In this document: positions 287 through 64,000 of the stretch, one piece after another
Layout: every line of letters begins with the position of its first letter
Position numbering within the stretch: the first letter of the stretch is position 1
NCBI GenBank assembly: GCA_964035545.1
Contig: OZ037766.1
Span: 28,813,673-28,877,672 of the forward strand
DNA: 64,000 nt
DNA from: Bugula neritina
Taxonomy: Eukaryota; Animalia; Bryozoa
Direction of reading: 5' to 3'
Made by a program: the position numbers and the translations under genes
Notes under the pieces: generated by a model
Seen by the model: only the letters and a program-made list of their open reading frames with translations
What the model was told of the DNA's origin: nothing
Database searches by the model: none

Positions 287-2641
287 GTGTTCGAGGAATT
301 AATGGGAAAGACGGAATAAATGGAAGAGATGGAAGAGATGGTGCAGCCGGTCTAAATGGCCGTGATGGTAAATAATAAAAACTATAAAATACTATTTTCT
401 GCATATTATATTGCTAAATATAGTATATTATGTGCAAATACATATGTTATAGTTTGTGCAGTAATGATCAAAATGAAGTAATAAGTGTTTATTTTTTAAA
501 AGCTATTTTACTAGATTCTATAAATATAAAAAATCTTTTTGTAAGTTGCATCAGTGGCAACATTTTGTTAATTTAATGTTTGCAATATGCATGTGCTATG
601 CTTTGAATAAACGAAATAAATAAATTATACTGCTCTAAAAATCAGCTCCAACATAAACTCTTTGCAAAATATACATTAGTTTGGCATTTGAATTGATTCT
701 GTTCTGCTACTGTAGTTTACAAGTATTTAAAACAGTTACAGTCACAGCTGTCAACATTACTTCAATTAAACAATAAAGTCGTGACGTTTTTCACAATAAA
801 CAAGAACTTACCTCTTGTAAAACTAGTCTTATTTATAGGTGCTTTCCCAAAGTTTGAACTTTTCTTACAGGCAGAGATGGAGTACCAGGTTCTCCAGGTG
901 CTCCTGGACTCAAAGGTGATAAAGGTTCATCAGGTCTAGCCGGACTTAGAGGAGAGAAAGGAGTACAAGGATCTCAAGGGAGACCTGGCATTGATGGGGA
1001 AAAGGGAGAACCTGGTGCTAATGGATTGGAAGGTGCTGTTGGAGCAAAAGGTACTAAAGGGGAAAGAGGAGATTTGGGTTCCAGGTCCAACTGTATAGTA
1101 GCCAGTTGGATATACTTGCCTATTAGAATTACTCTAACTGTACACATGCTAATTAGGTGTACATGCTCTGATAAATCTCCAAAGCATATTACACTGGCCT
1201 GCAATGCCTAATTTCAGGTCAAAGTTGCTTACCTTTTATATATAAATATGTTTGATAATGCAGGGTAGGAGCTTACAGGTTATTAGAGGTATTCATGTTT
1301 CTTATATCAACAGCTGTCAATTGCTAACTATATCCATAGTTAGATTTAATAAAAAGTACTAAAGTTACCACAAAGTTACCATTAATTATAAAATAAATTC
1401 CAGCAGTATTGACAATAAATACAGTAGGTACAGCATAAAAAGCCTGTTTAGGTTGCCCGATTTGTTGTCAACTTATTATTCTTATTTTATCTCATTAGGT
1501 TATTTATGGATAATGTCAGAAGCTTATTTAAATTGAATTGTTGTTATCACTGGAATTATGATCCCTGTCACTTTATCATAACTCTTTCGTAATAAAGGGT
1601 CTCAAGGAGTGAAAGGAGAAAAAGGAAACATTGGTAACACAGGAGCAACTGGTCTAAGAGGAGCAACTGGTGCTCGTGGAGTGCCAGGAACTAACTTTGA
1701 AGGAGGTGCTGTGTACACCAGATGGGGGAGGACTAATTGCAGTGCTGGTTCAACTAAACTTTACAAAGGTGTGCTAGTTATTAAATCATTTAACTTTAGA
1801 TAACAAAGTATATTTTAACAAATCTATAGTTGCTTGGTAAAAAAGCACAGCTTCGCGCAGTTGATGCAGTTATTCATTATATTCAGTATATTAGAATATT
1901 AATCTATATTGTTATATCAAATCTATTTGCTATCACAGGCTTTGTTGGAGGATCACACTATACCCACACTGGAGGTGGAGTGAACTATCAGTGTATGCCA
2001 ACTGATCCACAATATAACAGAGTGTACACTGGATCTTTTGCTGGTTCTTGGATTTATGGAACAGAATACCAATCTTATAGTTATGGAATATTCCCCAATT
2101 CAGCTTTTAACCAGAATGTACCATGTGCCAGATGTTATACAGAGAACAGACCAGCTCTTATGATGATTCCGGCTAAAAGATCTTGTCCATCTGGGTGGAC
2201 ACAGGAGTATGAAGGTATTTAACATTATAAAATAACTTTTTTAAACACGTCACTTTTAATTCTCACTAATATGGCATACACTATTTGTCTGCATAATATA
2301 CTGCTATATGGCATCCTTTTAATTTTTTTGAGACAAATCAAACAGAAATTTAACAAATAATTGAGAAATGGCTTGCTAAATGTGTTATAAGTTTAAAAGT
2401 CAATATAATACATTCAAGTTGTATTTCAGGTTACCTAATGACTGCTTATCACAGCCATGCTCACCCAACTACATATGAGTGTGTAGATCAGTATCCTGAG
2501 TATCTATCTGGACTGGCTGGCAGCACGAATGGAGCTTTGTTTTACTTTGTCAGTACTGATTGCTCTGGAGAGGGAACTACTGGACACTGTCCACCATATG
2601 ATGAGAAGAAACAGCTAACTTGTGTTGTTTGTTCTAAATAA
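287..2641 (+). CDS. Short-chain collagen C4/spongin-like gene, copy A (5' partial). Exons 287-367, 871-1050, 1598-1768, 1939-2214, 2430-2641
   Basis: AG/GT-bounded phase-1 exons join into uninterrupted Gly-X-Y (40 triplets) followed by [13 protein letters not shown]...NVPCARC...[14 protein letters not shown]...CVDQYPE...CPPY...LTCVVCSK*, the motif set of spongin short-chain collagen C-terminal domains. The exon 5 acceptor (AAG at 1595-1597) is inferred. Confidence 0.8.
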
Positions 2642-2972
2642 TTTGTGTCTAATCAGAAAAGACTTACTTATCCAACTAGTATTTAACTGCTACAATTTCT
2701 AACCTTTGATAACCTCTATCTGCAAAACTAACTTAAATTATTCAACAAGTGCAGGAAAAGCAATGCTAAAAAATTAATATAATGATATTTGAAAGATCAA
2801 TATATACATATTCACTTTTCTTGCTTAAATTAATATTTTATAAGCTTGTGGGATATTGAATATATAAATAAAATACACAAAAATTAAATATATACTTTAT
2901 TGATAAATTAATTTAGTTTTAGTGAATAGACATTTTTCAGAGGCCCCTGATATCCCCAAGTTTACAATTTAA

Positions 2973-3303
2973 AACATTCTTGTTAGTCATCTTTATAGTG
3001 AAATGCACATAAAATCAAAGTTTCCTACCCATTTATTAACATGTCAAATTGTTTGCCATCTTTATAGTGGATTGTACATAAAATCAAAGTTGCCCACCCA
3101 TTGTCTAACTTTCTTGTTCGGCATCTTTATAGTTAAATCTACACGAAATTGAAGTTGCCCACCTATTTTCAGAACTTTCTTGTTTGCCATTTTTATAGCA
3201 AAATGTACATAAACTTGAAATTGTCACCCTTTTCTGAACATTCTTGTTTGTCATCTTTATAGAGAAATGTACATAAAATTGAAGTTGCCCACCCATTTTC
3301 ACA
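2973..3303. repeat. ~65-bp degenerate tandem repeat x5
   Basis: Core CATCTTTATAG..AAATGTACATAAAATTGAAGTTGCCCACC recurs at ~2988, 3057, 3122, 3188, 3252. Confidence 0.85.
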
Positions 3304-4773
3304 AATGATTTTTAAACACTGCTTCATTTTACAACAGTTTATATACATTTGCATTGTATGTTTGTTGTTTCTAGTCAGTGTTCTTGTTGTTTGTGGGTGG
3401 CCACCATCTTACGGTAAAGAACAACAAGACCTTGAAGCTTTAAATATATATTTTGAGGAAAAGAATGAGCAGACTGAATTCAAAGTCTTCAGAAGCCTAT
3501 TGATTCTGTAACATTCAGCTGGACCTCAATTTTAGATGAATTTTAAAGCTTGATAAGAAGAGCTAAAATAATTTTAGATATCCAAAGTGCAAAGCTCACT
3601 GCTAATGTTCAGTTTTGAATAAAAAAAGCTTAGCGTCCTACAATGATAATTTGTTATATTACTTTTACCTGCTTATATACAGAAATGTACTTTTTGTTGA
3701 TTTTTACTTATAAATAGCCATGTTTTGAATCAAGATTTCAAAAATAGCTTTAATTTTCTGACTGGTTAAATTTTTGCTGTACATCTTATAATCATAGTAA
3801 AAAGCCTGGTTAGAAAGAGATTTTTTAGAAGCAGGCTAAAGAATTATTTGTGTGTGGCAAGAGCCATCATGACTGGGTGTTTTTTCCAACATCACCATGC
3901 AGTGGCTTTTACTGGGATTAGGACCCATGGGACTTTGTGTTTACTAAACCAAAACGCAAACCACGAGACTTGCATAACCGCATGTTCGTATACTGGAAGT
4001 TTATTATATTATTATATTATCTAGCTAATCACAATTATATAAGTATAACATACATATTATTCAATACCAGCTCATGTTATTTAGTTTTGATTCAGCAATT
4101 AGCAAAGAAATAAACACATCCAAGACAGTTTCTGATTTTTGTAGTGATTGGTAAAATATACCTATACCAAGTCAACTAGAAGTATAAGTTTACTAATGTA
4201 TAGCTCTACTGTAATAAAGATATGTTATTTCATAATAATGATAAATACTAAAACTTCTATGCCAAGCAATTCTAACAATGTGCCGCCATGCTATACTATA
4301 AATGAGAAGGAGTATAGAAAATATTCAACTGTAGATTTTGCTTAAGCTGAATACATAGCTAAGAATTTTTATTGACTTCCTTAATTTTGATTGGAAAAGA
4401 TTGAAAGACATCTAAGGCACATCAACTCATTGTATGAAAACATACAATATTAGCTAAACCAGATATTTTTTTAACTTCTCTTATTCCCTGTATTTATAAC
4501 CTATTGGGTTTATAACAGAAACAACTATTAAGATGATGTAAATGCAAATTTAAAGCACAAAATCTTAGAGTTATTTAAACATATTTACAACTATAGTATT
4601 ACTATAACATGCATGCATATATATATGTAAGTCTTTTCTGCCATTAACAATGCCAGTTGAAACTATTGGGAAGAGCTTTTAGCAAAGAGGTGGCAATGAA
4701 GTGCAGTATATTTCCATGATAGAGTATATTAGAAAACTGGTTAAGTTAGACTACAAAATATTATAGAGAAATC

Positions 4774-4829
4774 CTATAGAAGCAAAGCATACCTACAATT
4801 ATAATTGTAGGTATGCTTTGCTTCTATAG
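4774..4829. repeat. Perfect 56-bp spacerless palindrome
   Basis: CTATAGAAGCAAAGCATACCTACAATTA|TAATTGTAGGTATGCTTTGCTTCTATAG. Confidence 0.95.
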
Positions 4830-5651: not shown

Positions 5652-5957
5652 TACTAGACTAGTGATTGTTGCAAACCCAATCAGCCATTAACTTGTTAAC
5701 AGTCACTAAGCTACCAAAACTTCAATGGAATGCTGCAATACTAAAATATAATTTAGCCTTTAAATTTGATAAAAATAGAAAGACTACATTGTAATCTTCA
5801 AAAGCTAAAACAGCACAAAAACCAGTGACAATAAGAAGTATTGTATATACTAATGGAACAGCTGAAGATTTATTTTTAACTTTATTGACAAACTCAACAG
5901 AGTAGAGATATTGATTACACATGGACTATAGCTGCAGTCAATAGATGTGACTTGATC

Positions 5958-6133: not shown

Positions 6134-9100
6134 ATGCGTGTTCCAGTAGTTACTTTGGTCACACTCTGTTCTCTGATTGGATACTCAGCTGGTGTTGGAA
6201 GTTATAATGTAGAGGATGTCAGAGAGTTGCTGGCAGAGCAAAGAGAAGAGCTAAAAGAAGAACTGACTGTTATTCTTAAACAACAGAATGAGACTTATCA
6301 GCAAGAAATTACAGCTCTACGGCAACAGGTTGAAGCTTTACAGCTAAAAGATAAAGCTGTACAGCAAGAGTTAGAGCTTCAACAGAAAGCTAATGAAGAA
6401 CTGCAAGCAACAGTTTACTTTTTACTCAAAGCTGTAAGTTAGAAATATATCAGCTATAATATAGTTGTTTTCTGCAGTGCATGCATGAACTTTGCTAAAA
6501 TAAATGCAACTTTACATGGAGCAAAACAAAAATTTATTACACATATTCAGTAGCTGTTGGTTCAAATTAAAATTAAAAGCTTTAAAGCTACTGCTGTTTG
6601 AGTTTGCAATATCTGAAGAGCTGCATATACAATAATTTAATTATTGGAAACCGGAAAATTGTTAATAGCTCTGGTACTTACTCATTGCTATTAACTTATA
6701 TTTTAAGTTGCTCACTGGGGAGTTGCCTAAAGCAGAAAACTTTGGAGAGACAGATAAGGAAAAGTTTTCAAGTTTGCTGGAACAGATCTGCATATTTGGT
6801 GAGCAGTTAACTTGAATTACAAATATAACAAATTAACTTTGACTAAGATAAGTTATACTGTGGAGATATTTCAGAAGTGTAAATATACCAATCATTGTTG
6901 TTATGCTCATATTGATATTAAATTTGCAAACAATCAGTTATGGCTTCCCCCAATATTGCAGTTTATAAAATTTAAAGTACTGCATGCTTTCCAATTTTTT
7001 GGGTTTGTTTTTGGTTGCATGTTATTGAAGTTTAACCATGCACTTTAACATAACTAAGGTTTAAAAATAGCTACATCTTGCATTTTCTGTACAAAGCATG
7101 TTTTTTCATTGTTGTACTTGTAAGAAATGAAAAAGATAAAAATCAGAATTTTTTAATGAGTGTTAAAGTAACTATATACCACTGCTATATATTACTACAT
7201 GCTACTACTACCACTTTAACCACCACTATACCATGCACTACTACCACTACTACCACTACTACCACCATTACCACTACCACCACTACCACCACTACCACCA
7301 CCATACTACCACTACTACCACCATCATATACCACTACTACCACCATCATCACTCATCACTACTATTAGTTTTATTGCTATAACTACTGCTGCTATTGCTG
7401 CTGCTACTGCAACTGCTACTACTATACTAGTATTACTATTACTACTACTGTTAGTGCTACTACTACTGCTATTACTACTGCAACTATTACTACTATTACT
7501 GTTGCTGCTGCTAGCGCTACTACTACTAATACCGGTGCTGCTGCATGAGTGTTATACAGCTACTTCACCTATAGTTGAAAAATTGACCAGTTAAGACACT
7601 TGATCAGGTGTTCGGGGCATTGATGGGAAAGATGGAAAAGATGGAAGTGATGGGATAAATGGAAGAGATGGGAGAGATGGTAGTGATGGAAAAGATGGTA
7701 GTGATGGAAGAGATGGGGCAGCTGGTTTAAATGGCCGTGATGGTGAGAAATAACAAAAACAAGGCTATTTTATGCATTTACTATAATATTGCTCAATTTA
7801 CAGTGCATGTGTGCATATAAAATTATGCAAATATATTGTTTCAATTAGTGCATCTTTAAAAAAACTATTAAGTACTAGTTATAATTTAAAACGTAATTAC
7901 CCAATTCTCATCACTGACTGTATTCTGCTAACAATTGATAACTGCTGTGAAAAGTTTTTGCCTTACTTTGAAGAAATGAAAGTTTCTTTCATTTGAACAG
8001 AAGTTACACAAAATCAAAAAGAAGTTATACATAAAATAATAAATTAAATAAAATAATGCACGAAGAGTTTTCCCCAGAAGTAATTTCTTACTGAATATTT
8101 CTGCATAGAAGTTTACCCTGTACTACTATTTGAGTTCACTATAAGTTTTTGCAATCATAGCTGTCTACAATACTTTTAATGTGCTAAAAACTCACCCAAG
8201 TATTTAGCTTAGCATTTATTAATGACAATGTTTTAATGTTGCAAAGCAAAGACTATAAATAGTTTTGAAAAAAAGAATTGACATGAAATTTTGCTACAGG
8301 CAGAGATGGAGCACCAGGTTCTCCAGGTGCTCCTGGATTGAAAGGTGCTCTTGGACCAAAAGGAGAACCAGGTAAATTAAAGAATCACTAAAAAAGTTAA
8401 TGAAGGATTATATTCGAGAAATTCCAGTGTGCCATTATATTACATAATGTTTAAGTTTCATCTTACAGGGTTGAAAGGAAATCAGGGATTTAAAGGGTCT
8501 CAAGGAGTGGAAGGAGAAAAAGGAAACACTGGTAACACAGGAGCAACTGGTCTAAGAGGAGCAACTGGTGCTCATGGAGTACCAGGAACTAATTTTGAAG
8601 GAGGTGCTGTGTACACCAGATGGGGGAGGACTAATTGCAGTGCTGGCTCAACTAGACTTTACAAAGGTGTGTACGTCAGTTATTGAATCATTTAACTTTA
8701 AATAACAAAGTATATTTTAACAAATTTATATAGTTGCTTGGTAAAAAAGCACAGCTTCAGTTGATGCAGTTATCCATTATATACAGTATATTAGAGTATA
8801 TATCTATATTATTATATCGAATCTATTTGGTATCACAGGGTTTGCTGGAGGATCACATTACACCCACAGTGGAGGTGGAGTGAACTATCAGTGTATGCCA
8901 ACTGACTCGCAGTATAACAGAGTGAACACTGGGTCTTTTTATGGCTCTTCAATTTACGGAACAGAATATCAATCTTTTAGTTATGGAATATTCCCCAATT
9001 CAGCTTATAACCAGAATGTACCATGTGCCAGATGTTATACAGAGAACAGACCAGCTCTTATGATGATTCCAGCTAAGAGATCTTGTCCATCTGAGTGGAC

Positions 9101-9529
9101 TAAGGAGTATGAAGGTAATTCATAGCATAAACACAATTTCTTTGAATTATTCGTGCAGTGACGTTTTTAAGATATGTGACTCAATTGTTACGATAAAAAT
9201 GGAATTTTCTTCAATTTTTTATAAAAATCCCATAAACTTTAAATAATTAAAAATATCTAATAATATAAACGTTTTATTTTAAAAAACAATATGATTGCCT
9301 TCAAATTTTATTTTCAGGTTACCTAATGGCTGATCGTAGTAACCATGCCCGAGCGGGTACATATGAGTGTGTAGATCAGTATCCTGAGTACATCACAGGA
9401 CTGAGTGGTGACACAAATGGAGCTCTGTTCTACTTTGTCAGAACTGATTGCTCTGGAGATGGAACTACTGGACATTGTCCACCATATCACGCAAACAAAC
9501 AGCTTACTTGTGTTGTTTGTTCTAAATAG
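6134..9529 (+). CDS. Short-chain collagen C4/spongin-like gene, copy B, ~427 aa. Exons 6134-6433, 6708-6798, 7608-7742, 8300-8371, 8469-8666, 8839-9114, 9318-9529
   Basis: ATG plus hydrophobic signal peptide ([20 protein letters not shown]), Glu/Gln/Leu heptads, 37 Gly-X-Y triplets and Cys-rich C-terminal domain. All introns are GT-AG; exon lengths sum to 1284 nt in frame with no internal stops. Confidence 0.85.
7192..7545. repeat. (ACT/ACC/GCT)n compound microsatellite, intron 2 of copy B
   Basis: Read directly; same position in all copies. Confidence 0.9.
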
Positions 9530-13081: not shown

Positions 13082-13749
13082 ATGCATGTTCCAGTAGTAA
13101 CTTTGGTCACACTCTGTTCTCTGATTGGATACTCAGCTGGTGTTGGAAGTTATGATGTAGAGGCTGTTAGAGAGTTGCTGGCAGAGCTAAAAGAAGAACT
13201 AAAAGAACTGACTGTTACTCTAAGACAACAGAATGAAACACATCAGCAACAAAATACAGTTCTGCAGCAACAGGTTGAAGCTTTACAGCTGAAAGATAAA
13301 GCTGTACTGCAAAAATTAGAGATTCAACAGAAAACTAATGAAGAACTGCAAGCAACAGTTTACTCCTTACTCAAAGCTGTAAGAATTAGAAATATATCAG
13401 CTATAATATTATATATGTAGTTTCTTTCTGTGGTGCATGGAACTTTGCTAAAATACATGCAACTTTAAACGTAGCAAAGAAAAATATTTTTACACATATT
13501 CATTAGCTGTTGGTTCAAATTAAATTCAAAAGCTTTAAAGCTACTGCTGTTTGAGTTTGCTACATATGAAGAGTTGCATACAATAATTTAATTATTGAAT
13601 GTTTGAGACTTGTTAACTGTGCTGGTAGGTTACTCAGTTCAATTAATTTATATTTAAGTTGCTCACTGGGGAATTGCCTAAAGCAGAAAACTTTGGAGAG
13701 ACAGATAAGGGAAAGTTCTCGAGTTTGCTGGAACAGATCTGCATTTTTG
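13082..13749 (+). pseudogene. Truncated collagen paralog, copy C (exon 1 13082-13378 and exon 2 13659-13749 only)
   Basis: Exons 1-2 are homologous to the other copies. Intron 2 runs into the LTR element at 14394, and no exon 3-7 sequence occurs before the next promoter (~25500). Confidence 0.8.
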
Positions 13750-14124: not shown

Positions 14125-14393
14125 CTATCACTACCACCACTACTACTACTACCATCACTAATAATGCTACTACTGCTACTACTACTATATACTACCACTA
14201 CTGCTACTGCTACTGCTACTACTACTGCTACTACTACTATTGCCACTACTACTACTGCTACTACTAGTACTGCTACTACTACTACTACTGCTACTACTAC
14301 TACTGCTACTACTAGTACTGCTATTGCTACTACTACTATTACTACTACTGCTACTGCTACTACTGCTACTACTAGTACTGCTACTGCTACTAC
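14125..14393. repeat. (ACT/GCT)n microsatellite, intron 2 of copy C, abutting the 5' LTR
   Basis: Read directly from the sequence. Confidence 0.9.
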
Positions 14394-17044
14394 TGTAAGA
14401 TGATCTGATGTTGACAAGCTACAAGCTAGCAAGTACTAAAGCTACTGACAAGTGATAGCCGAAGGAAAGCCAACAAGGAACACTCTGGAGCTAGAGCTTA
14501 GCCTGGTAGGTTAACACTACATGGCGCAGTCGGCAGGATATTGAGGAGACAAGAGTTACAAAAGAGAGAAGTGTGTTGTTTGGAGTTCACTAGACTTCAG
14601 AGGTTTATATTTGGAAAAAAGAGTTGAGAAAGGTGGTGAGTGTTGACTTTTGAGCAATTTATAAAGAATACTAATAGATTCAGAATAAGAGTGACTGCGA
14701 AAGGAACTGAGAATTAAACTTTGAGAGACACGGATGCCCAGAGATTGAAACTGAGAGTACAGTGCATAATCACGAGATAGCTGCTTAAAATTAAATTGTT
14801 TTATTTACTCTATTAAAACTGCTCAAGTGTAGTATGGCTCATTAAGACATCAAATTAGACCTTAATGCTTTTCCTAAATTAAAGTTGGATGAAAGCAACA
14901 TAACCAAATCTTGGAACTCATGGCTCATTCAATTTAAATTGATTATAGAAGTTACTTCCCTTAATGCAGGGTTTGAAGTAGTAGGGGATGAACAGGTTAG
15001 CAGATTTAGAGGTAGGAGAAAGCTTTTAGCTCTGTTAGGAGCTGTAGGATCAGAAGGTCTTGATACTTTACAGTCATTAGGTTTTGATTTGAATAATAAC
15101 TCTGATGATGGATATGAGTTAGCCTTAGACTTACTGCAATCTCACTATGATAGAGATGATACATTTTATGTGAAAACCATGAAGTTTGTCACTGTGACCC
15201 AAGCTTGTGGAGAAAACGAAATTGATTATTTGCTAAGAGTTGAGAAGCTAAGTAGAGCAATAAACTTTGGCAATAATGATGATGTTAGAATGGGATTTGC
15301 AGTTGCACTAGCAGTTAATGGTCTAAGAAATGCAGGATTACGTAGACATTTGTTGCAGCATGCTAACCTAAGCTGGGAACAGCTGAAAAGAAAAAGTCGT
15401 GCTGCACATTTAAGTAAACTTACTGAGGATGCTTTAAATGCAATAAACAATGAATGCATAGATGAACAGTCAATTGGTAGACTCACATATTCTTACCAAG
15501 CTAATGGTAACTCAGAACATTGTAAGAAAAGAGATAAAGTCCTACATAGATCTAATTATGATAAGATAACTTCTATCAATAGAGACAACTCTTTTTCAAA
15601 GAAAAAGGAGGCATGTAATTCATATCAACATTGTAGTTATAAATCGCAAAATGCTTACAAAAGTCATGGTAGATGCTTTAGATGTGACCGTACAGGACAT
15701 TATGTGAGAAACTGCCCTAAAACCCGTTGCTACATGTGCAAGGAATTCGGCCACATTGCTCAAGATTGTTCTGATAACGAAAGATACCATCACAAAAAGA
15801 GATATGTGGAACAAAGAGAAAACAGGATCGGAGTTATGGACTCCTTAAAATCAGTGAAGTTTTCTAAAAAGAGTGATGTGACTTATAATCACAATGTCAG
15901 TCCTAAAATAACAAGGACTTTACTAGTTAGTGGTAGGCGTGTAGAATTCTTGCTAGATACTGGGTCTGAGGTTTCTACACTTACTGAGGCGACTGCAGAA
16001 AAGTTGAACATTAAATTAAAGGAACCAGATAAGCATATTACAGGTGTTGATAAGTCTTTGGTGAATGTGCTAGGCAGAGCTAAGGTTTGCATTGGCGACT
16101 TCAACAGATTTGTGGATACCAAGATTTATGTATTGGCAAACTCTACTGAAAATTTGCTTGGTATAGCTGATATTACTAGGTTAAAATTGCTGGATCTGCA
16201 ATGTTGATATAAAATGATACATGTGTGTTGTAGATATGGAAAAGTGTATTGATGTTCACTGTAATGATATAAACACATTATTGCAGTGGAATACTATTGA
16301 ATGACAGGCAGAAGCAGTTACCAACAATGTTGTCTGCTCCCGTGAGTTTAACTCATGGAAGACTCTGTAAGCCGACGAGAGAAGTCAGTTGTGACCCTCG
16401 CTGTTGCTTCACGGGGTGTGAGCCGAGTGTAGTCTATATGCAGACCCTCGACATCTCACTTTCAGATAATATGATAAATGTGAGGTTTGACCTCAGTACT
16501 GACATGACATCATCAACATTGCCACTAATGTTGTCTGCTCCTGTGAGTTCCTTAGTTTAACTCATAGAAGACTCTGCAAGCTAGCAAGAGAAGTCAGCCT
16601 TGACCCTTGCTGCTACTTCACTTGCAGATACTATGATAAATGTCAAATTTGGCATTGTTCTTCCCAACAGTGCTAGCATTGCGAGGAGGTGGGATTCGAC
16701 ATCTAGGACTGAGCCACTTTGAACCACTTCATAATAAGTTTAAGTATTCAAGGGCATTAGTTGAAAGCTAGTTTTGTTTGAATTGATTGCACTTCTCTTT
16801 TAAAAGAAAAGGGCATGTGGAATTATTAGCATCATGATGATGATAATATAGATATGTGTTCTGGTATTCTGAAAATGTGCTCTTGTGCCCTGCTTCTCTT
16901 TTGTAAGGAGGGAGCATGTAAGATGATCTGATGTTGACAAGCTACAAGCTAGCAAGTACTAAAGCTACTGACAAGTGATAGCCGAAGGAAAGCCAACAAG
17001 GAACACTCTGGAGCTAGAGCTTAGCCTGGTAGGTTAACACTACA
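14394..17044 (+). mobile_element. Non-autonomous Ty3/Gypsy (Mag-like) LTR retroelement, 2651 bp, gag + protease only
   Basis: Identical 128-bp TG...CA LTRs (14394-14521, 16917-17044); PBS TGGCGCAGTCGGCAGGAT (14522-14539) complementary to a tRNA-Ser 3' end; purine tract AAGGAGGGAG just before the 3' LTR; no RT/RNase H/integrase motifs seen. Confidence 0.92.
14834..16207 (+). CDS. Retroelement Gag (two CCHC zinc knuckles) fused to aspartic protease; in-frame TAA at codon 4
   Basis: CFRCDRTGHYVRNC and CYMCKEFGHIAQDC knuckles, FLLDTGSEVS active site, C-terminal NLLG. ATG at 14834 is in frame with ORF 14885-16207 but followed by TAA at 14843-14845. Confidence 0.85.
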
Positions 17045-17969: not shown

Positions 17970-18001
<32 letters not shown>

Positions 18002-18447: not shown

Positions 18448-18481
<34 letters not shown>

Positions 18482-25669: not shown

Positions 25670-27062
25670 ATGCGTGTTCCAGTAGTAACTTTGGTCACAC
25701 TCTGTTCTCTGATTGGATACTCAGCTGGTGTTGGAAGTTATGATGTAGAGGGTGTTAGAGAGTTGCTGGCAGAGCAAAGAGAAGAGCTGAAAGAAGAACT
25801 GACTTTTATTCTAAAACAACAAAATGAAACACATCAGAAACAAAATACAGTTCTGCAGCAACAGGTTGAAGCTTTACAGCTAAGAGATAAAGCTTTACTG
25901 CAAGAGTTAGAGCTTCAACAGCAAGAGTTAGAGCTTCAACAGAAAGCTAATGAAGAACTGCAAGCAACAGTTTACTCCTTACTTAAAGCTGTAAGTTAGA
26001 GCTATATCAGCTATATAATATTATAGTTATTTCCTGTGGTGCACGGAACTTTGCTGAAATACATGCAACTTTAAACAAGCAAAACAAAATATTTTTACAC
26101 ATATTCTTTAGCCGTTGGTTCAAATTAAAATCAAAAGCTTTAAAGCTAATGCTGTTTGAGTTTGCTACACATGAAGAGTTGCATACAATAATTGAATTAT
26201 TGAATGTTTAAAACTTGTTAATGGTGCTGGTATGTTACTCAGTTTGATTAATTTATATTAAAGTTGCTCACTGGAGAGTTGCCTAATGCAGAAAACTTTA
26301 AAAAGACAGATAAGGAAAAGTTTTCAAGTTTGCTGGAACAGATCTGCATTTTTGGTGAGCAGTTAACTTTAATTACAAATATAACAATTCAACTTTGACT
26401 AAACTAAGTTATACTATGGAGATATTTCAGAAGTTTAAATGTACCAACCTTTGTTGTTATGTTTATATATGAGATTGAACTTGCAAACACTTAGTTATGG
26501 CTTCTCTCAATAGTGCAATTGCAACCATAAATAAATTTAATAAAATTTAAAGTCTTGCATGCTTTACAATTTATTGTTTCCCGTTACATGTTATTGCAGT
26601 CTAACTATGCACTTTAAAATCACTAAGTTCTAAAAATAGCTACACCTTGCTTTTTCTGTAGAAAATATGTTTTCCATTGTTGTCATGATTTGCTGTAAGC
26701 TGACGGATGTTATGAATTACAATTAAACGTACACCTCTATAGCGTAAGATAAAAAAAGATAACAATCATAAGGTTTAATAGGTGTTAAAGTAACTACTAC
26801 TGCAGTATAGTAGTTACTTTAACAGCAGTAGTAGTAGTGGTAACACTAGTAGTAGTGATGGTAGTGATGATAGTGGTAGTAGTCACCGACACTCATTAAA
26901 CAACCTGCTTGTTATCTTTTTTATTTACACGCTATCACTACCACCACTGTAATACCACTGCCACCACTACTACCACTACTACCACTACTACCACTACTAC
27001 CACTACTACCACTACCGTCACTAATAATGCTACCGCTGCTACTACTACTACTGCTACTAAAA

Positions 27063-27106
<44 letters not shown>

Positions 27107-27205
27107 ACTACTGCTGCTGCTACTACTGCTGCTACTACTGCTGCTACTACTGCTGCTACTACTGCTGCTACTACTACTACTGCTACTAAAACTACTGCTA
27201 CTGCA

Positions 27206-27274
<69 letters not shown>

Positions 27275-27290
27275 ACTACTACTACTACTT

Positions 27291-27385
<95 letters not shown>

Positions 27386-27471
27386 GCTACTACTGCTACT
27401 ACTACTGCTATTGCTACCGATACTGCTACTGCTGCTAGCGCTATATACTGCTACTGCTACTACCACTACTG

Positions 27472-27522
<51 letters not shown>

Positions 27523-30500
27523 TTACCACTACTACTGCTACCGCTACCGATACTACTACTGCTGCTATAGCGCTATATACTGCTACTGATTCTGTTGCTG
27601 CTGAGTGTTATACCGCTACATAATCTATAGTTCAAAAAGTTGACCAGTTAAAACACTTGACCAGGTGTTCGGGGCATTGATGGGAAAGATGGAAAAGATG
27701 GAAAAGATGGAAGTGATGGGATAAATGGAAGAGATGGGAGAGATGGTAGTGATGGAAGAGATGGAAGTGATGGAAAAGATGGAAGTGATGGGAAAGATGG
27801 GGCCGCTGGTTTAAATGGCAGTGATGGTGAGACATAAAAAAACCAAAGCTATTTTCTGCATTTACTATAATATAATAATAATTATTAAAATTATAGTGCA
27901 TGTGTGCATATAATATGTCAATAAATTGTTACCATTAGTGCATCTGCAAAAAATTATTAGGTGCTAGTTATAATTTAAAAAATAATTACCCAATTCTCAT
28001 CACTGACAGTATTCTGCTGATTTGACCACTGCAGTGAATAGTTTTTGCCTTACTTTGAAGAAATGAAAGTTTCACTCATTTGAAAAGAAGTTACATGAAA
28101 TTAGGAATTAAATAAAATAATGCACGAAGATTTTTTCTAAAAGTAATTTTTTACTGAATATTTATGCATAGAAGTTTACTCTGTACTACTATATTTGAGT
28201 TCATTATAAGTTTTTGCAATCATAGCTGTCTACAATAATTTTAATATGCTAAAGAACTCATCCAAGTAGTTAGCTTAACATTTATTAATGACAATGTTTT
28301 AACATTGCAAAGCAAAGACTAACTGGTTTTGAAAAAAAGAATTGACATGAAATTTTGCTACAGGCAGAGATGGAGCACCAGGTTCTCCAGGTGCGCCTGG
28401 ATTGAAAGGTGCTCTTGGACCAAAAGGAGAGCCAGGAGGTGTTGGAAACGCTGGGAAAGATGGCTTACCAGGTGCTCCTGGACCTAAAGGAAACAAAGGC
28501 TCACCAGGCTTAGCTGGAATTGATGGTGAAAAGGGAGAAACTGGTGCTAAAGGAATGCAGGGTGCTGTTGGAGCAAAAGGTACGAAAAAGAGGGAGTTTT
28601 GGGTGCCACAGGTTTAACCCTATAGTAGTTAGTGGGATATACCTGCTTTTCAAAACTACTCTATCTGCAGGCAAATTTTTTGGGTGCATATGTCCTTATA
28701 AATATCCAAAGCGTATTACACTGACCTTCAATGCCTAGCTTTAGGTCGAAGTTGCTAACTTTTAGATATAACTATGTTTAACAATGCAGGGTAGTAGCTT
28801 GCAAATAATTTTAGAAGTATTTACAAGAATCAGCAACTACCATGCAATTGCTATAACTATTCATATTTGAATTTATTGAAAAATACTAAAGTTACCACAA
28901 TTATTTATAAATTCTCTACTACCCCATAAGTTTTAGAACTATTTAGTGTAAACACAGTAGGTACTGTAGCAAAAACCTGTTTAGGTTGCCCTATTTTCTG
29001 TCCATTTAATATCCTTGTTTTAGCGCTTTAGTTTATTTATGGCCAATATCAGAGGCTTATTTAAATTGAATTGCTGTAGCTGGAGTTGTGATTCCTGTCA
29101 CCTTAACATAATTCTTTCAAATAGAGCATATTATAGAGAAAGTGTTTGTGTAATAAATCCAAAATGGCCGACAGCTCTTGCAGCTTAATTATAGTTAAGG
29201 GAGGCTGATAAAAGAATCACTAACAAAGTTAATGAAGGATTATATTTGAGAAATTCCAGTGTGCCATATTTATATTACATAATGTTTAAGTTTCATCTTA
29301 CAGGGTTGAAAGGAAATCAGGGAGTTAAAGGGTCTCAAGGAATGAAAGGAGAAAAAGGAAACATTGGTAACACAGGAGCAACTGGTCTAAGAGGAGCAAC
29401 TGGTGCTCGTGGAGTGCCAGGAACTAATTTTGAAGGAGGCGCTGTGTACACCAGATGGGGGAGGACATCTTGCAGTCCTGGCTCAACTAGACTTTACAAA
29501 GGTGTGCTAGTTATTAAATCATTTAACTTTAGATAGCAAAGTATATTTTAACAAATATATAGCTGCTTGGTAAAAATCGCAGCTTTAGTTGATGCAGTTA
29601 TCCATTATATATAGTGTAGTGAAATTAGCGCTACTTTGCTAAGCTATTTTAGCTATATAATTAACGTACTAAGAAAAGCTTTCTACAGCACAGCCAGTGC
29701 TAACTGAAAGACCTCTGACACTTGGCAATAGTTAGTGCTAGTGAACTAGTGTAATTTTAAGAGAGCAAAATAAGTAAGTTATATACATTAATTATATTGT
29801 TTCTTTTTCTTGTAGATTACAACTATTTTTTTTGTTTTTCTATTGTTTATTTATGTTTATCCTGATCATGTAAGTTTGAATTGCAATAATTGTAGTCTTG
29901 ACGATGTCAATAGGATGTCAATAGGATGTCAATAGGATGTCAATAGGATGTCAATAGGATGTCAATAGGATGTCAATAGGATGTCAATAGGATGTCAATA
30001 GAAGTCAATGAGATCAACAAATGTATATTAGAATAAAACATAATAAAGGACATCAGTGAAGAGTTAATGCATTTTTTAATTGCATTTTATAAACACTTAA
30101 TTTAGACATTTTAAAAAATCATTTCAAGAGTCATCAATTTAAGATATGAAATTAAATAATGCATGAAAAAAAAGTTGCACAACTAGCTTTTAGAAGCATG
30201 CATATTGCAATTGAACTTGCAGAATTTTATATCAGTTACAATGGTAGAACATTGACCTGGTACACTTCGCTGATTGGCTGAGTTTTACATGGTCTTCTAG
30301 ACCATGTAAAACTCAGCCAATCAGCGAAGTGTACCAGGTCAATGTTCTACCATTGTAACTGATATAAAATTCTGCAAGTTCAATTGCAATATGCATGCTT
30401 CTAAAAGCTAGTTGTGCAACTTTTTTTTCATGCATTATTTAATTTCATATCTTAAATTGATGACTCTTGAAATGATTTTTTAAAATGTCTAAATTAAGTG

Positions 30501-36500: not shown

Positions 36501-37700
36501 ATCTATGCTACAATAAAGTACTGCACACACACGGATTCTACTCTCTCTTTTGTCTCTTCTATAACAAGGAGTTATGTTCTCTGCCTGATTTCATTCTATA
36601 ACCCACAAACTACTACAATATATAATTGTGCAAACTAATTTGAATAATAAATATTTAAGCCGTCCAAATTTTTGGTTTGTGCGTTTTTGTGATTAGTGAA
36701 AGCTATATTTCTAGGCTGAATTTAATTTTAAAAAAACTGTATAAAGATTTTTTAATCCTTTGAAACTTTTAAATTGGTTAAATTAAACCAACAATAAGCG
36801 ATTAAAATAAACTAGCAGAAATACTTTTTAAACTTTAGTACTAAATCAACTCTACCCAATAGCAGCCCCACGTTATTTTTTAAATCAAGCACTGCACAGC
36901 GTATAGGCCTACTCTGGTACAATTCAGCTTGAATACGGCAATGTGTGAACAGGGGAATATTTACTGTTATGAAGTACGGCACGGTAAGTGTGAATGAGGA
37001 GTAAGCATCACTAAGCGATCCATCCACAATATCATTTATACGTTTTGTTGCCCCTAAAAATTGATTTGTTGCTGACATGCAACTGACTGTATATGTTACT
37101 CTAGACCAGCACAAGGCTGTGCATATATAATAAGACAATCTTGCGCCAGCTCCACATTGTCTAGCAGTAAGCTGACTTAGTATAGTAGATCTGACTTTTG
37201 TAGGTATTTTTCTTACTCATGTAACGTTTTTACTCTTATATATTTTTGGCATTTCATTAATAATTTGGCATTCGATAAATACTAGATTGTATCATACTCG
37301 TACTGTTGTATAATCACACGTACCAGATCAGTTTATGCTCCAATCTAAATAACCCACACACATTGTGAACTAACGGCATAAATTCACAACAATAATCTAA
37401 TAAAATTTTGACTATAAAAAAGAACTTGATAAACTAAAACTGCAGTGCAATTTTAAAAATCAATATACTGTTCTTTAAATTTTATTTTCAGGTTACCTAA
37501 TGCCTGAGCATCATACTCATGCCCATGCAGCTACATACGAGTGTGTAGATCAGTATCCTGAGTACATAACAGGACTGAGTGGTAATACAAATGGAGCTCT
37601 GTTCTATTTCATCAGAACTAGTTGTACAGATGGAACTACCGGACATTGTCCACCATATGATGCATACAGACAGCTCACTTGTGTTGTTTGCTCTAAATAA
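25670..37700 (+). CDS. Short-chain collagen C4/spongin-like gene, copy D, ~490 aa. Exons 25670-25990, 26264-26354, 27665-27826, 28364-28579, 29304-29501, 35406-35681, 37492-37700
   Basis: Same 7-exon structure, 56 Gly-X-Y triplets, 1473 nt in frame. Introns 5 and 6 are enlarged by transposon insertions. Confidence 0.85.
26935..27600. repeat. Expanded (ACT/GCT/ACC)n microsatellite, intron 2 of copy D
   Basis: Read directly from the sequence. Confidence 0.92.
29903..30001. repeat. 11-bp tandem repeat (GATGTCAATAG) x9
   Basis: Read directly from the sequence. Confidence 0.95.
30067..30527. repeat. 461-bp palindrome (229-bp arms, 3-nt loop TCT at 30296-30298)
   Basis: 30067-30295 reads as the reverse complement of 30299-30527 with no mismatch noticed. 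Confidence 0.92.
31312..33380 (-). pseudogene. Decayed THAP/HTH/DDE_Tnp_4-type (ISL2EU-like) transposase
   Basis: Minus-strand motifs [17 protein letters not shown] (THAP C-terminus), [20 protein letters not shown] (HTH), CIIDCTEIF...[20 protein letters not shown]...GGRASD, frameshifted [13 protein letters not shown] (catalytic E changed to V), [11 protein letters not shown]. Probable intron ~32117-32946. Stops and frameshifts present. Confidence 0.85.
34200..34888. mobile_element. piggyBac-type MITE, 689 bp
   Basis: TTAA duplicated (34196-34199, 34889-34892); termini CCCTTACGCTATCAA / TTGATCGCGAAAGGG; the empty TTAA site is visible in the opposite arm (~30551-30570). Confidence 0.9.
35802..37391. 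mobile_element. Unclassified ~1.6-kb insertion in intron 6 of copy D (TG...CA ends)
   Basis: Absent from intron 6 of copies A, B and E (~200 nt there). Ends TGTAACGATTT / AAATTCACAACA; boundaries approximate. Confidence 0.6.
36106..36617 (+). mobile_element. Solo LTR, 512 bp
   Basis: TGTAGTAG...CTACTACA termini, ATAT target-site duplication (36102-36105, 36618-36621), internal TATATAA (~36440) followed by AATAAA (~36512). Confidence 0.85.
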
Positions 37701-40279: not shown

Positions 40280-43200
40280 ATGCGTGTTCCAGTAGTAACT
40301 TTGGTCACACTCTATTCTCTGATTGGATACTCAGCTGGTGTTGGAAGTTATGATGTAGAAGGTGTTAGAGAGTTGCTGGCAGAGCTAAGAGAAGAGCTAA
40401 AAGAAGAACTGACGGTTATTCTAAAGCAACAGAATGAAACACATCAGCAAGAAATTACAGTTCTACGGCAACAGGTTGAAGCCTTACAGCTAAAAGATAA
40501 ATCTGTACTGCAAGAATTAGAGCTTCAACAGCAAGAATTAGAGCTTCAACAGAAAACTAATGTAGAACTTCAAGAAACAGTTTACTCCTTACTAAAAGCT
40601 GTAAGTTAGAAATATACATGCAACTATAAACAGAGCAAAACAATTTTTTTTAACACATACTCGCTGTAGCTGTTGGTTCAAATTAAAATCAAAAGCTTTA
40701 AAGCTAAAAATTGTTTGAGTTTGCTATATGTGAAGAGCTGCATACAATAATTTAATAATTGAATGTTTGAAAGTTGTTAATAGCTCTGGTATGTTACTCA
40801 TTGTTATTAACTTATATTTTAAGTTGCTCACTGGGGAGTTGCCTAAAGCAGAAAACTTTAGAGAAACAGATAAGGAAAAGTTCCCGAGTATGCTGGAACA
40901 GATCTGCATTTTTGGTGAGCAGTTAACTTTAATTATAAATACAACAATTCAATTTTGACTAAGATAAGTTATACTGTGGATATATTTCAGAAGTCTAAAT
41001 GTACCAACCATTGTTGTTATGTTTATATGAGATTGAATTTGCAAGCAATTAGTTATGGCTTCTCCCAATATTGCAATATCAACCATGCATAACTTTAATG
41101 AAATTTAAGTCTGGCATGCTTTACAATTTATCTTTTTCTGTTGCATGTTATTGCAGTCTAACTATGCACTTTAAAATAGCCAAGTTCTAAAAATAGTTAC
41201 ACCCTGCTTTTTCTGTAGAAAATATGTTTTCCATTGTTGTCATGATACACTGTAAGCTGAGGGATGTTATGAATTACAATTAAACATACACCTCTATAGT
41301 GTAAAATAAAAAAAGATAACAATCAGAAGATTTAATAAGTGTTGAAGTAGCTACTACTGCAGTATAGTAGTTACTTTACCAGCACTAGTAGTAGTGGTAA
41401 CACTAGTAGTAGTGATGGTAATGACGATATTGGTAGTAGTCACCGACACTCAATAAACAACCTGCTTGTTATCTTTTTTATTTACATGCTATCACTACTA
41501 CCACTGTACTGCCACTGCCACCACTACTACCGCTACCATCACTAATAATGCTACCGCTGCTACTACTAGTATATCACTACTATACTACTATACTGCTACT
41601 ACTACTACTGCTACTACTACTACTGCTACTACTACTACTGCTACTACTACTACTGCTACTACTACTACTGCTACTACTACTACTGCTACTACTACTACTG
41701 CTGCTACTACTACTGCTACTACTACTACTACTACTGCTACAGCTACCGCTAACGATACTGCTACTGCTGCTAGCGCTAACGATACTGCTACTGCTGCTAG
41801 CGCTATATACTGCTACTGATTTTGTTGCTGCTGAGTGTTATACAGCTACTTAATCTATAGTTCAAAAAGTTGACCAGTTAAAACACTTGATCAGGTGTTC
41901 GGGGCATTGATGGGAAAGATGGAAAAGATGGAAAAGATGGAAGTGATGGGATAAATGGAAGAGATGGGAGAGATGGTAGTGATGGTAGAGATGGAAGAGA
42001 TGGAAGTGATGGAAAAGATGGGGCAGCTGGTTTAAATGGCAGTGATGGTAAGACATAAAAAAACCAAAGCTATTTTCTGCATTTACTATAATATAATAAT
42101 AATTATTAAATTTATAGTGCATGTGTGCATATAATATGTCAATAAATTGTTACAATTAGTGTATCTTTAAAAAATTATTAGGTGCTATAGTTATAATTTA
42201 AAAAGTAATTACCCAATTCTCATCACTGACAGTATTCTGCTAATTTGACAACTGCAGCGAAAAGTTTTTGCCTTACTTTAAAGAAATGAAAGTTTCACTC
42301 ATTTGAAAAGAAGTTACATAAAATTAGGAATTAAATAAAATAATGCACAAAGATTTTTTCCAAAAGTAATTTTTTACTGAATATTTATGCATATAGAAGT
42401 TTACTCTGTACTACTATTTGAGTTCATTATAAGTTTTTGCAATCGTAGCTGTCTACAATAATTTCAATATGCTAAAAAACTCATCCAAGTAGTTAGCTTA
42501 GCATTTAATAAATGACAATGTTTTACCAATGCAAAGCAAAGACTAAATAGTTTTGAAAAAAAAGAATTGACATGAAATTTTGCTACAGGCAGAGATGGAG
42601 CAACAGGTGCTCTTGGACCAAAAGGAGAGCCAGGAGCTGTTGGAAACGCTGGGAGAGATGGCTTACCAGGTGCTCATGGACCTAAAGGAGACAAAGGTTC
42701 ACTAGGTTTAGCTGGAATTGATGGTGAAAAGGGGGAAACTGGTGCTAAAGGAGTGCAGGGTGCTGTTGGAGTAAAAGGTATAAAAAAGAGAGAGTTTTGG
42801 GTGCCACAGGTTTAACCATATAGTAGTCAGCTGGATATACTTGCCTTTTAAAACTACTCTATCTGCAGGCAAATTATTTGGGTGCGTATGTCCTTATAAT
42901 TATCCAAAGCGTATTACACTGACCTTCAATGCCTATAGCTTTAGGTCGAAGTTATGCTAACTTTTAGATATAACTATGTTTAACAATGCAGGTTAGTAGC
43001 TTGCAGATAATTTTAGAAGTATTTACAAAAATCAGCAACGTATACCAATTGCTATAACTATTCATATTTGAATTTAATAAAAAATACTAAAGTCACCACA
43101 ATTATTTATAAATTCCCTACTAACCCATAAGTTTTAAAACTTATTAGTGTAAACACAGTAGGTACTGTAGCAAAAACCTGTTTAGGTTGCCCTCTTTTCT

Positions 43201-44561
43201 GTCTATTTAATATCCTTGTTTTAGCGCTTAAATTTATTTATGGCCAATATCAGAGGCTTATATTTAAATTAAATTGCTGTAGCTGGAGTTGTGATTCTTG
43301 TCACTTTAACATAATTTTTTCAAATAGAGCATATTATAGGGAAAGCGCTTGTGCAACAAATCCAAAATGGCCAACAGGTCTTGCAGCTAAATTATAGATA
43401 AGGGAGGCTAATTAAAGTACACTAACAAAGTTAATGAAAGATTATATTTGAAAAATTCCAGTGTGCCATTATATTACATAATGTTCAAGTTTCATCTTAC
43501 AGGGTTGAAAGGAAATCAGGGATTTAAAGGGTCTCAAGGAGTGAAAGGAGAAAAAGGAAACACTGGTAACACAGGAGCAACTGGTCTAAGAGGAGCAACT
43601 GGTACTCGTGGAGTGCCAGGAACTAATTTTGAAGGAGGTGCTGTGTACACCAGATGGGGGAGGACTAGTTGCAGTGCTGGCTCAACAAGACTTTACAAAG
43701 GTGCGCTATTCATAACATAATTTATGTTTAGACTGCAAAGCATATTTTAACAAATTTATAGCTGCTTGGTAAAAAAGCACAGCTTCAGTTGATGCAGTTA
43801 TCCATTATATATAGTATATTAGAGTATAAATCTATATTATTATATCAAATCTATTTGCTATCACAGGGTTTGCTGGAGGATCACATTGGACCCACAGTGG
43901 TGGTGGAGTGAACTATCAGTGTATGCCAACTGATCCACAGTATAACAGAGCATACACTGGATCTGTTGATGGCTCTTCAATTTACGGAACAGAATATCAA
44001 TCTTATAGTTATGGAATATTTCCTAGTTCAGCTTATGACCAGAATGTACCATGTGCCAGATGTTATACAGAGAACAGACCAGCTCTTATGATGATTCCAG
44101 CTAAGAGATCTTGTCCTACTGGGTGGACACAGGAGTATGAAGGTAATTTATAACATAAACACAACCTCTTTAAAATGCAGTTCTTAATTGTTACTATAAA
44201 AATGGCATTTTCTTCAATTGTTTTGTAGTGATATAAGATCTAATAAACTTTTCTTTTTAAAATCCAATAAACTTTAAAGAATGAAAAATACTTAATAAAC
44301 TAAAAGTTTAATTTTAAAAATCAATATGCTTGTCTTCAAATTTAATTTTCAGGTTACCTAATGGCTGAGCGTCATAATCATGCCCGCGCAGCTACATATG
44401 AGTGTGTAGATCAGTATCCTGAGTACATAACAGGAATGAGTGGCAATACAAATGGAGCTCTGTTTTATTTCATCAGAACTAGTTGTACAGATGGAACTAC
44501 TGGACATTGTCCACCATATGATGACAAGAGGCAGCTTACTTGTGTAGTTTGCTCTAAATAA
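40280..44561 (+). CDS. Short-chain collagen C4/spongin-like gene, copy E, ~478 aa. Exons 40280-40600, 40824-40914, 41895-42047, 42589-42777, 43503-43700, 43867-44142, 44353-44561
   Basis: Same 7-exon structure, 52 Gly-X-Y triplets, 1437 nt in frame, GT-AG introns. Confidence 0.85.
41492..41830. repeat. (ACT/GCT)n microsatellite, intron 2 of copy E
   Basis: Read directly from the sequence. Confidence 0.9.
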
Positions 44562-53550: not shown

Positions 53551-53664
53551 GGAGCAATTATGATTGGATGCTTTTGCTAGCGTCACCACTGGTTTTTAGT
53601 GGGGTTCAAACCCATGACTTGGTATTTGCTATCCAACGCGTTAACCACTAAACCATGGCTACTC
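53551..53664 (-). mobile_element. tRNA-derived SINE head (related, more decayed copies at ~3860-3980, ~23505-23625, ~60130-60250)
   Basis: Minus strand reads GTAGCCATGGTTTAGTGGTTAA (A box) ... GGGTTTGAACCCC (B box), then CCAGTGGTGACG..AAAGCATCCA; no intact cloverleaf. Confidence 0.65.
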
Positions 53665-57051: not shown

Positions 57052-57176
<125 letters not shown>

Positions 57177-62622: not shown

Positions 62623-63027
62623 CAGTGGTGCATGTCTATAACTTTTTCAGAGCAAAGTCTATACTGAAATGGAACATTCTGGTGTTGAGAGCCACATTGT
62701 GAAATTTAGCTTGATCTGAGGACCATAGTATTAGCATATTTAATATAAGTTACTTTTTTATAAATTTCTATTCATATGACATCAGTGATAACTGTCTCAT
62801 GTCAACGTATAATGTCCCATGCAATAGCTACTGCATGCTGCATGTTTTGTAGCATGTTTGTAAATAAAATATTTAAAAAATAAATTTTCCACTCTAATTC
62901 ATATATGTAACTGTAAAAACTGATTTTATTTGTTAAATTTCATGCCTTTGAGGGCCACATAAATGTAGGCTGGTATATATTCTCATCTATAATAGCCCTG
63001 CATAAGGCCAGCTGTTGAACAGCCCTG
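62623..63027. mobile_element. Degenerate hAT/Charlie-like MITE upstream of copy F
   Basis: Collinear with 12211-12600; right end GTTGAACAGCCCTG. Confidence 0.65.
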
Positions 63028-63507
63028 TATTAAACTGATGATTGCTGCAAACCCAATCAGCCAATAACTTGTTAACAGTCACTAAGCTACCAAAACTTCA
63101 ATGGAATGCTGCAATGCTAAAATATATTTAGCCTTTAAATTTGATAAAAAACAAAAAAAATACATTGTTATAGTCTCCAAAATCTAAAACAGCACAAAAA
63201 CCAGTGACAATAAGAAGTATTGTATATACTAATGTAACAGCTAAAGACTTATTTTAACTTTATTATCAAACTGAATAGAGTAGAGAGATTGATTACACAT
63301 GCACTGGCTGCAGTCAATAGATGTGACTTGATCATTGGCTCCTTGTGAATATAAAAGTTGTATAAATTCTGTTCTAATCATAACAAGGTAGACATCGGCT
63401 GATCGATGCTATCAAAGAAGACTCAAAGAATAAAGTGATTTAGAAAGTTTTAAAGTGTTAATAATTGTGCTTTAATTTCATAAAAGTTTTGTTAAAAGAA
63501 CACAAAC

Positions 63508-64000
63508 ATGCGTGTTTCAGTAGTAACTTTGGTCATACTCTGTTCTCTGATTGGATACTCAGCTGGTGTTGGAAGTTATGATGTAGAGGGTGTTAGAGAG
63601 TTGCTGGCAGAGCAAAGAGAAAAGCTAAAAGAAGAACTGACTGTTATTCTAAAGGAAGAGGTTGAAGCTTTACATCTAAAAGCTGAAACTTTACAGCAAG
63701 AATTAGAGCTTCAACAGAAAGCTAATGTAGAACTGCAAGCAACAGTTTACTCCTTACTCAAAGCTGTAAGTTAGAACTATACATGCAACTTTAAACGGAG
63801 TAAAACAAAAATTTTTTTACACATATTCATTAGCTGTTGGTTCAAATTAAATTCAAAAGCTTTAAAGCTAATGCTGTTTGAGTTTGCTTTATATGAAGAG
63901 CTGTATATAATAAATTATTTACTGAATGCTGAAAAATTATTAATAGCTCTGGTAGGTTACGATCAGTTTTATTAACTTATATTTTAAGTTGCTCACTGGG
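63508..64000 (+). CDS. Short-chain collagen paralog, copy F (3' partial). Exon 1 63508-63765; exon 2 starts at 63989
   Basis: Signal peptide/coiled-coil exon homologous to the other copies, GTAAGT donor, and conserved exon 2 start TTTTAAG|TTGCTCACTGGG at the window edge. Confidence 0.75.

What the first reader, a model, noticed from the sequence alone, without database searches (positions are those of the whole stretch)
287..63765. Tandem array of collectin-like secreted collagens with a variable spongin-type head: candidate diversified recognition system
Seen: six paralogs share signal peptide - coiled coil - single Cys (EQICIFG) - G(K/R)DG-rich stalk start - collagen - Cys-rich head. In the four visible heads (A/B/D/E), [25 protein letters not shown] and all Cys are invariant. 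Substitutions cluster in short patches rich in aromatic/His/charged changes: SHYT/SHYT/SRYS/SHWT; [40 protein letters not shown]; QSYSY/QSFSY/ESGSF/QSYSY; AFN/AYN/AHD/AYD; [40 protein letters not shown]; DEKK/HANK/DAYR/DDKR. Established: a Cys followed by GRDGRDG at the stalk start plus a terminal globular head is the layout of vertebrate collectins (MBL, SP-D), whereas spongin short-chain collagens are usually treated as structural. Inference: this array may encode ligand-recognition (immune, allorecognition or adhesion) molecules diversifying at a binding surface.
Basis: partly seen in the sequence, partly recalled or inferred. Interest (0 to 1): 0.85.

Follow-up and report, generated by a model that had tools for sequence, protein, structure and literature searches.

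The report
Expanded bryozoan spongin-type collagen gene array
The moss animal Bugula neritina has about 70 genes for short secreted collagens of the known spongin family, and their head domains vary in a fixed set of loops, a few positions of which look positively selected, which hints at (but does not show) a diversified binding role rather than a purely structural one.

Summary
The window (Bugula neritina chromosome 2) holds five intact seven-exon genes and one copy cut off by an LTR element. Each encodes signal peptide, coiled coil, one Cys, 36-55 unbroken Gly-X-Y triplets and a ten-Cys head. The quoted patches are exact and clustered (p 0.006). The head belongs to the known spongin short-chain collagen ("C4-like") family and matches only collagen IV NC1 structures, no lectin. 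These are not collectins: the coil lies on the wrong side, and the GRDG start occurs in 16 of 23 collagen-bearing relatives from other animals. About 70 heads occur genome-wide in tandem clusters, with exon shuffling, turnover and spliced transcripts. The variable patches are loops, and the same columns vary in two clusters. As a whole they evolve near neutrally (omega about 0.8, against 0.2 elsewhere). The window's own heads show no positive selection (p 1; nine-copy cluster p 0.38). A neighbouring cluster does (about 4% of sites, omega 3.5, p 4e-6, surviving recombination controls), at sites inside the patches. A variable binding surface is plausible; an immune role is untested. The scan noted the same family on neighbouring DNA before.

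The parts
287..2640 (+). Copy A, exons 3-7 (287-367, 871-1050, 1598-1768, 1939-2214, 2430-2640); exons 1-2 lie upstream of the window; 444 aa, 39 Gly-X-Y triplets; exon 5 is shortened at its 5' end and uses an in-frame AAG acceptor
   Evidence: open frame, GT-AG introns
6134..9528 (+). Copy B, complete seven-exon gene (6134-6433, 6708-6798, 7608-7742, 8300-8371, 8469-8666, 8839-9114, 9318-9528); 426 aa, 36 triplets (short exon 4)
   Evidence: RNA-type contigs of family members join the exons at 8664/8837
13082..13749 (+). Copy C, truncated: signal/coiled-coil exon and Cys exon only; no stalk or head follows
14393..17044 (+). gag-protease LTR-type element that interrupts copy C; 97% identical twin in the neighbouring cluster
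25670..37699 (+). Copy D, complete (25670-25990, 26264-26354, 27665-27826, 28364-28579, 29304-29501, 35406-35681, 37492-37699); 489 aa, 55 triplets
30067..35155 (.). DNA transposon (DDE_Tnp_4, PIF/Harbinger type) with long inverted repeats inside intron 5 of copy D
40280..44560 (+). Copy E, complete (40280-40600, 40824-40914, 41895-42047, 42589-42777, 43503-43700, 43867-44142, 44353-44560); 477 aa, 51 triplets
63508..64000 (+). Copy F, exon 1 (63508-63765) and start of exon 2; the rest lies beyond the window and is intact (466 aa, 54 triplets)
1939..2214 (+). Head exon 6 of copy A: carries patches 1-4, including the positions with omega above 1 in related copies (the T of SHYT, the A and W of GSFAGSW, the first Y of QSYSY)

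Best explanation
These are secreted, trimeric spongin short-chain collagens whose heads act as variable binding modules at the body surface or in the outer matrix. SHOWN: gene layout, family membership, a head made of two repeats with six conserved strands regions and variable loops, about 70 copies in tandem clusters, exon-level mosaicism, broken copies, splicing in RNA-type runs, near-neutral loops with a few sites at omega 3-4. INFERRED from collagen biology: three chains zip through the N-terminal coiled coil and the head, the single Cys links chains or trimers, and three heads are displayed at the end of a 10-16 nm stalk (36-55 triplets). INFERRED from distant homology: the variable loops lie on the face away from the stalk, which in collagen IV docks on another trimer. 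Unequal crossing-over makes and removes copies, gene conversion mixes exon 6 and exon 7 loop sets, purifying selection holds the core, and selection at a handful of loop positions tunes what each head binds (microbial surfaces, fouling substrate or other matrix molecules). Whether the partners are microbes is not known.
For: 77 and 78 head-exon matches in about eight clusters. Same columns vary in two separate clusters, Spearman 0.62. Variable columns are mostly loops, 28 of 34, p 0.01 (model of a Watersipora relative, pLDDT 94). Patches of the two internal repeats correspond (hhalign probability 98%). Plus cluster with four heads of a second assembly: exon 6 p 0.005, and the A of GSFAGSW (six residues seen) is again a top site. 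Recombination signal p 0.0015 and discordant exon trees; positional orthologs share exon 6 (4.4% different) but not exon 7.
Against: The four window heads give M8 = M8a (p 1) and the nine-copy cluster p 0.38, p 0.07 with the second assembly added. The patches as a block have omega 0.6-1.06, never above 1. Heads are no more divergent than the coiled-coil region (83% against 84% identity). Loop variability is what any relaxed domain shows. No ligand, induction or tissue data; published mentions treat the family as matrix (PMC5395295, PMC6626399). The site models are my own code with naive empirical Bayes, and multi-base mutations were not modelled.
Confidence: 0.45

Rival explanations
1. Structural or adhesive matrix proteins (cuticle, basal attachment, larval glue, frame of the skeleton) amplified for dose or tissue-specific expression; the loops simply drift once a copy is redundant.
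For: Family described as matrix (PMC5395295); two members up-regulated in the sea anemone's adhesive foot (PMC6626399). Patch omega about 0.8 and no selection in the window's own cluster. Broken copies are common.
Against: Sites with omega 3-4 recur in the same loop in two clusters and survive controls. Stalks are short and low in proline (3-7%), poor for load-bearing fibres. RNA contig depth is low (a weak measure).
Confidence: 0.33
2. The loops are an assembly code: as in collagen IV NC1, they decide which chains form a trimer and which trimers dock head to head, so paralogs diverge to avoid mixed assemblies.
For: The only structural relatives are collagen IV NC1 domains, whose trimer-trimer face uses residues 64-78 and 175-189 (PMC6527180); the loop with the strongest selection sits at the matching place in the repeat (inference from remembered collagen IV sequence, not aligned by a tool).
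Against: Structural similarity is low (TM 0.26-0.29, Z 2.7), so the docking geometry may not be kept; frequent exon swapping would scramble a strict code.
Confidence: 0.13
3. Colony allorecognition: the array is a polymorphic locus that decides fusion or rejection between colonies.
For: Colonial animal; clustered, variable, secreted proteins; other samples' heads are only 84-95% identical to these.
Against: That divergence is matched by 11-12% divergence in single-copy flanks of the second assembly, as expected for the known cryptic species (PMC11480708); no allele data; no membrane anchor.
Confidence: 0.05

Closest known systems
[quoted passage not shown]
   Same: Short collagen followed by a C-terminal two-repeat Cys-rich NC1 head with no Pfam model; best full-length hits are Watersipora, Lingula and Branchiostoma proteins of that name or layout. 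Bugula neritina proteins of the other assembly are 84-90% identical in the head exon.
   Different: Copy number (about 70) and recent tandem turnover with exon mosaicism and selected loop sites; I found no paper describing this for the family.
Collagen IV NC1 (C4) domain
   Same: Two-repeat head, shared Cys and CP..W...Y.GY motif; only hits in the PDB by profile (E 5e-6) and by fold (E 5e-4).
   Different: Very short stalk, N-terminal coiled coil, no HSQ motif, weak whole-domain superposition (TM under 0.3).
Collectins, ficolins, C1q (defence collagens)
   Same: Secreted; N-terminal Cys, GRDG-type stalk start, short collagen, terminal globular head (collectin features from own knowledge).
   Different: Head is not a C-type lectin, fibrinogen or gC1q domain; coil precedes the collagen, as in class A scavenger receptors or CL-P1 (own knowledge); no MASP motif.
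Expanded invertebrate recognition families (C1qDC, FREPs, ApeC proteins)
   Same: Lineage-specific tandem expansion of a secreted domain with variable loops. ApeC clusters appear as weak feature look-alikes (0.82 and 0.78).
   Different: No binding data here; the ApeC scores are below the tool's 0.9 lead threshold and did not reappear in the shape search.

Membership tests
Spongin short-chain collagen-related | Short collagenous domain directly followed by a C-terminal NC1 head | tested here: met
   36-55 unbroken triplets, then a head of about 185 aa ending at the stop
Spongin short-chain collagen-related | Ten head cysteines (seven shared with collagen IV plus three family-specific, PMC5395295) | tested here: met
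   10 Cys in all five intact heads; the count was tested, the one-to-one assignment to the published columns was not
Spongin short-chain collagen-related | Head is a two-repeat domain distantly homologous to collagen IV NC1, lacking HSQ and a PF01413 match | tested here: met
Spongin short-chain collagen-related | Sequence similarity to named members | tested here: met
   56-60% identity to Watersipora 'short-chain collagen C4-like' proteins, E 3e-29
Collectins | C-terminal C-type lectin domain with EPN/QPD and WND motifs | tested here: not met
   No Pfam Lectin_C match, no motif, no lectin among fold matches
Collectins | Coiled-coil neck between collagen and head | tested here: not met
   Collagen runs straight into the head; the coil is N-terminal
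Collectins | N-terminal Cys and GRDG-type start of the stalk | tested here: met
   Present, but also in 16 (motif) and 10 (Cys) of 23 collagen-bearing family members, so not diagnostic
Collectins | Calcium-dependent sugar or microbe binding | not testable with these tools
   needs recombinant protein
Diversified recognition gene family | Positive selection at surface sites | tested here: inconclusive
   Met in the neighbouring cluster and in exon 6 of the enlarged plus cluster, not met for the window heads or the patches as a block
Diversified recognition gene family | Selected sites form one exposed face | tested here: inconclusive
Diversified recognition gene family | Expression in immune tissue or induction by microbes | not testable with these tools
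   Only unlabelled contig runs; they show spliced family transcripts

The most novel reading that the evidence does not exclude
Bryozoans have turned the spongin/collagen IV-type NC1 head into a diversified immune recognition module: a 70-gene repertoire of defence collagens whose binding loops are mixed by exon conversion and tuned by selection, a fourth kind of defence-collagen head beside C-type lectin, fibrinogen and C1q domains.
Probability: 0.28. Interest if true: 0.75.

Novelty: new member of a known kind. Interest (0 to 1): 0.42.

Why it matters
The spongin short-chain collagens are widespread in invertebrates, have no Pfam model and no solved structure, and are assumed to be matrix. 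A 70-copy family with recurring selected loop sites is a concrete reason to test that assumption, and gives named positions and natural variants for binding assays. Little is known of bryozoan immunity or of how Bugula handles its bacterial symbiont and fouling films. If the loops merely drift, this is an ordinary tandem expansion.

Tried and rejected
Collectin membership: rejected (no lectin domain, coil on the wrong side, motif family-wide). Link to ApeC pattern-recognition domains: only sub-threshold feature scores, not supported by shape search. Extreme allelic polymorphism: the mismatch with other samples is explained by 11-12% background divergence of the second assembly. Single-sequence fold of a Bugula head failed (pLDDT 30) and was not used. 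A half-repeat profile gave no longer alignment to collagen IV. The Atlas shape search gave TM only about 0.5 to named relatives, so the relative placing of the two repeats in the monomer model is uncertain. The 2006 family paper is not held.
Full report
Source. The window is G000:C2:28813673-28877672 of a 216,009,554-base assembly in 321 pieces, with C2 33,575,671 bases long. This matches the Bugula neritina assembly tzBugNeri2.1 (216.00 Mb, 320 scaffolds plus mitochondrion, chromosome 2 33.58 Mb; PMC11480708). The nearest named proteins are B. neritina models.

Observation. Six copies lie head to tail on the + strand. A, B, D, E and F are intact seven-exon genes with GT-AG introns, 426-489 residues, one Cys in the mature N-terminal part, 36-55 unbroken Gly-X-Y triplets with only 3-7% proline, and a head with ten Cys. 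C keeps only exons 1-2 and is cut off by a gag-protease LTR element at 14393-17044. All quoted patches are exact. His is enriched in them; aromatic and charged residues only slightly.

What the head is. Pfam has no model for it. Exon 6 finds 1812 relatives among cluster representatives; the best full-length ones are Watersipora, Lingula and Branchiostoma proteins named short-chain collagen C4-like or of that layout. This is the spongin short-chain collagen family, described as short collagen plus an NC1 head homologous to collagen IV and present across invertebrates other than ecdysozoans (PMC5395295). A profile of 84 heads finds only collagen IV NC1 in the PDB (E 5e-6). An AlphaFold model of a Watersipora head (pLDDT 94) also matches only NC1 domains, weakly (E 5e-4, TM 0.26-0.29, Z 2.7). 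The head is two repeats (probability 98%).

Collectin comparison. There is no C-type lectin domain or motif, no neck coil before the head and no PGKxGP motif. The coil lies before the Cys and the collagen. The GRDG start is found in 16 of 23 collagen-bearing relatives, with a Cys just before it in 10, so it is a family trait. The claim 'is a collectin' fails; 'displays three heads on a short stalk, as defence collagens do' remains a fair analogy (inference).

Family dynamics. The two head exons give 77 and 78 matches in about eight clusters on chromosomes 1, 2, 3, 5 and 6, about 70 genes. In the 237 kb I could read, stops, a frameshift, lost exons and near-identical recent duplicates occur beside intact genes. 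The window's cluster shows recombination (PHI-type test p 0.0015) and different trees for exons 6 and 7. In a second B. neritina assembly, which differs by 11-12% even in single-copy flanks and is probably another cryptic species, the array is not one-to-one, and the positional ortholog of F shares exon 6 (4.4% different) but carries another type of exon 7. Three runs guessed to be RNA hold contigs that cover exons, skip introns and join exon 5 to 6 at the predicted place, mostly at 85-95% identity to B: the family is transcribed, but no single window copy is shown to be.

Selection. I fitted codon site models with my own code. The four window heads: omega 0.30 overall, 65% of sites frozen, 35% at omega 1, no class above 1 (p 1). 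The nine heads of the cluster: p 0.38; with four heads of the second assembly p 0.07, and exon 6 alone p 0.005. The 13 heads of the minus-strand cluster 77 kb away: 3.6% of sites at omega 3.5, p 4e-6, which holds exon by exon and with gap regions removed, though weaker (p 0.012). None of 21 neutral simulations with four different segment trees reached the observed statistic (22.6; highest 14.5). Taken as a block, however, the patches have omega 0.8 against 0.2 for the rest in sequences outside the window, and heads are no more divergent than the coil. So the pattern is relaxed loops with a few selected positions, not wholesale hypervariability.

Where the patches lie. 28 of 34 highly variable columns are outside strands (p 0.01), and patches in repeat 1 correspond to patches in repeat 2. 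By position between conserved Cys and strands, the most selected loop matches the collagen IV segment 64-78, which lies at the trimer-trimer face (PMC6527180). If right, the variable loops face away from the stalk, which fits either an outside ligand or head-to-head assembly.

Verdict. A real, transcribed, lineage-expanded array of a known family. A variable binding surface is the likeliest reading (0.45), a matrix or adhesive role with drifting loops is close behind (0.33), and a specifically immune repertoire has perhaps 0.28 probability. Paper searches found no description of such an expansion or of selection in this family. Earlier readers in this scan raised the same idea on the flanking windows; that is not independent support.

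Noticed in passing
protein P0052 (not in the window): A 3949-residue protein recorded from the choanoflagellate Choanoeca perplexa carries many tandem spongin-type heads (13 matched stretches), although spongins are described as limited to invertebrate animals (PMC5560861). Could be real pre-animal origin or contamination of the transcriptome.
   Followed up: no
window 14393-17044: Compact gag-protease LTR-type element without pol, interrupting copy C; 97% twin at C2 about 29.009-29.012 Mb in the neighbouring collagen cluster.
   Followed up: partly
window 30067-35155: PIF/Harbinger-type transposon with long near-perfect inverted repeats (461 and 817 bases, 97-99%) inside intron 5 of copy D.
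   Followed up: partly
window 47542-54164: A 6.7 kb block duplicated 69 kb upstream (88.6%), with ORFs 50572-50955 (127 aa) and 51256-52086 (276 aa, lysine-rich); no credible Pfam match.
   Followed up: partly
window 46906-47343: Reverse transcriptase fragment (RVT_1, E 8e-11), LINE-like.
   Followed up: no
L041:2091-6998 (C2 about 28.887-28.892 Mb): Single gene just downstream of the array that looks like a type I membrane protein with signal peptide, CUB-like and sushi-like exons and a Tyr-motif tail (by eye); conserved in place in the second assembly.
   Followed up: no
proteins P0053, P0054, P0056, P0057, P0060, P0064: Collagen-less or nearly collagen-less proteins made of four to six tandem spongin-type heads (one from the clam Tegillarca), showing the head is also used as a repeated module.
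   Followed up: no
window 8300-8468: Copy B has a deletion that shortens exon 4 and the next intron yet keeps frame through a new donor; stalk length varies from 36 to 55 triplets between copies without a single Gly-X-Y break.
   Followed up: partly
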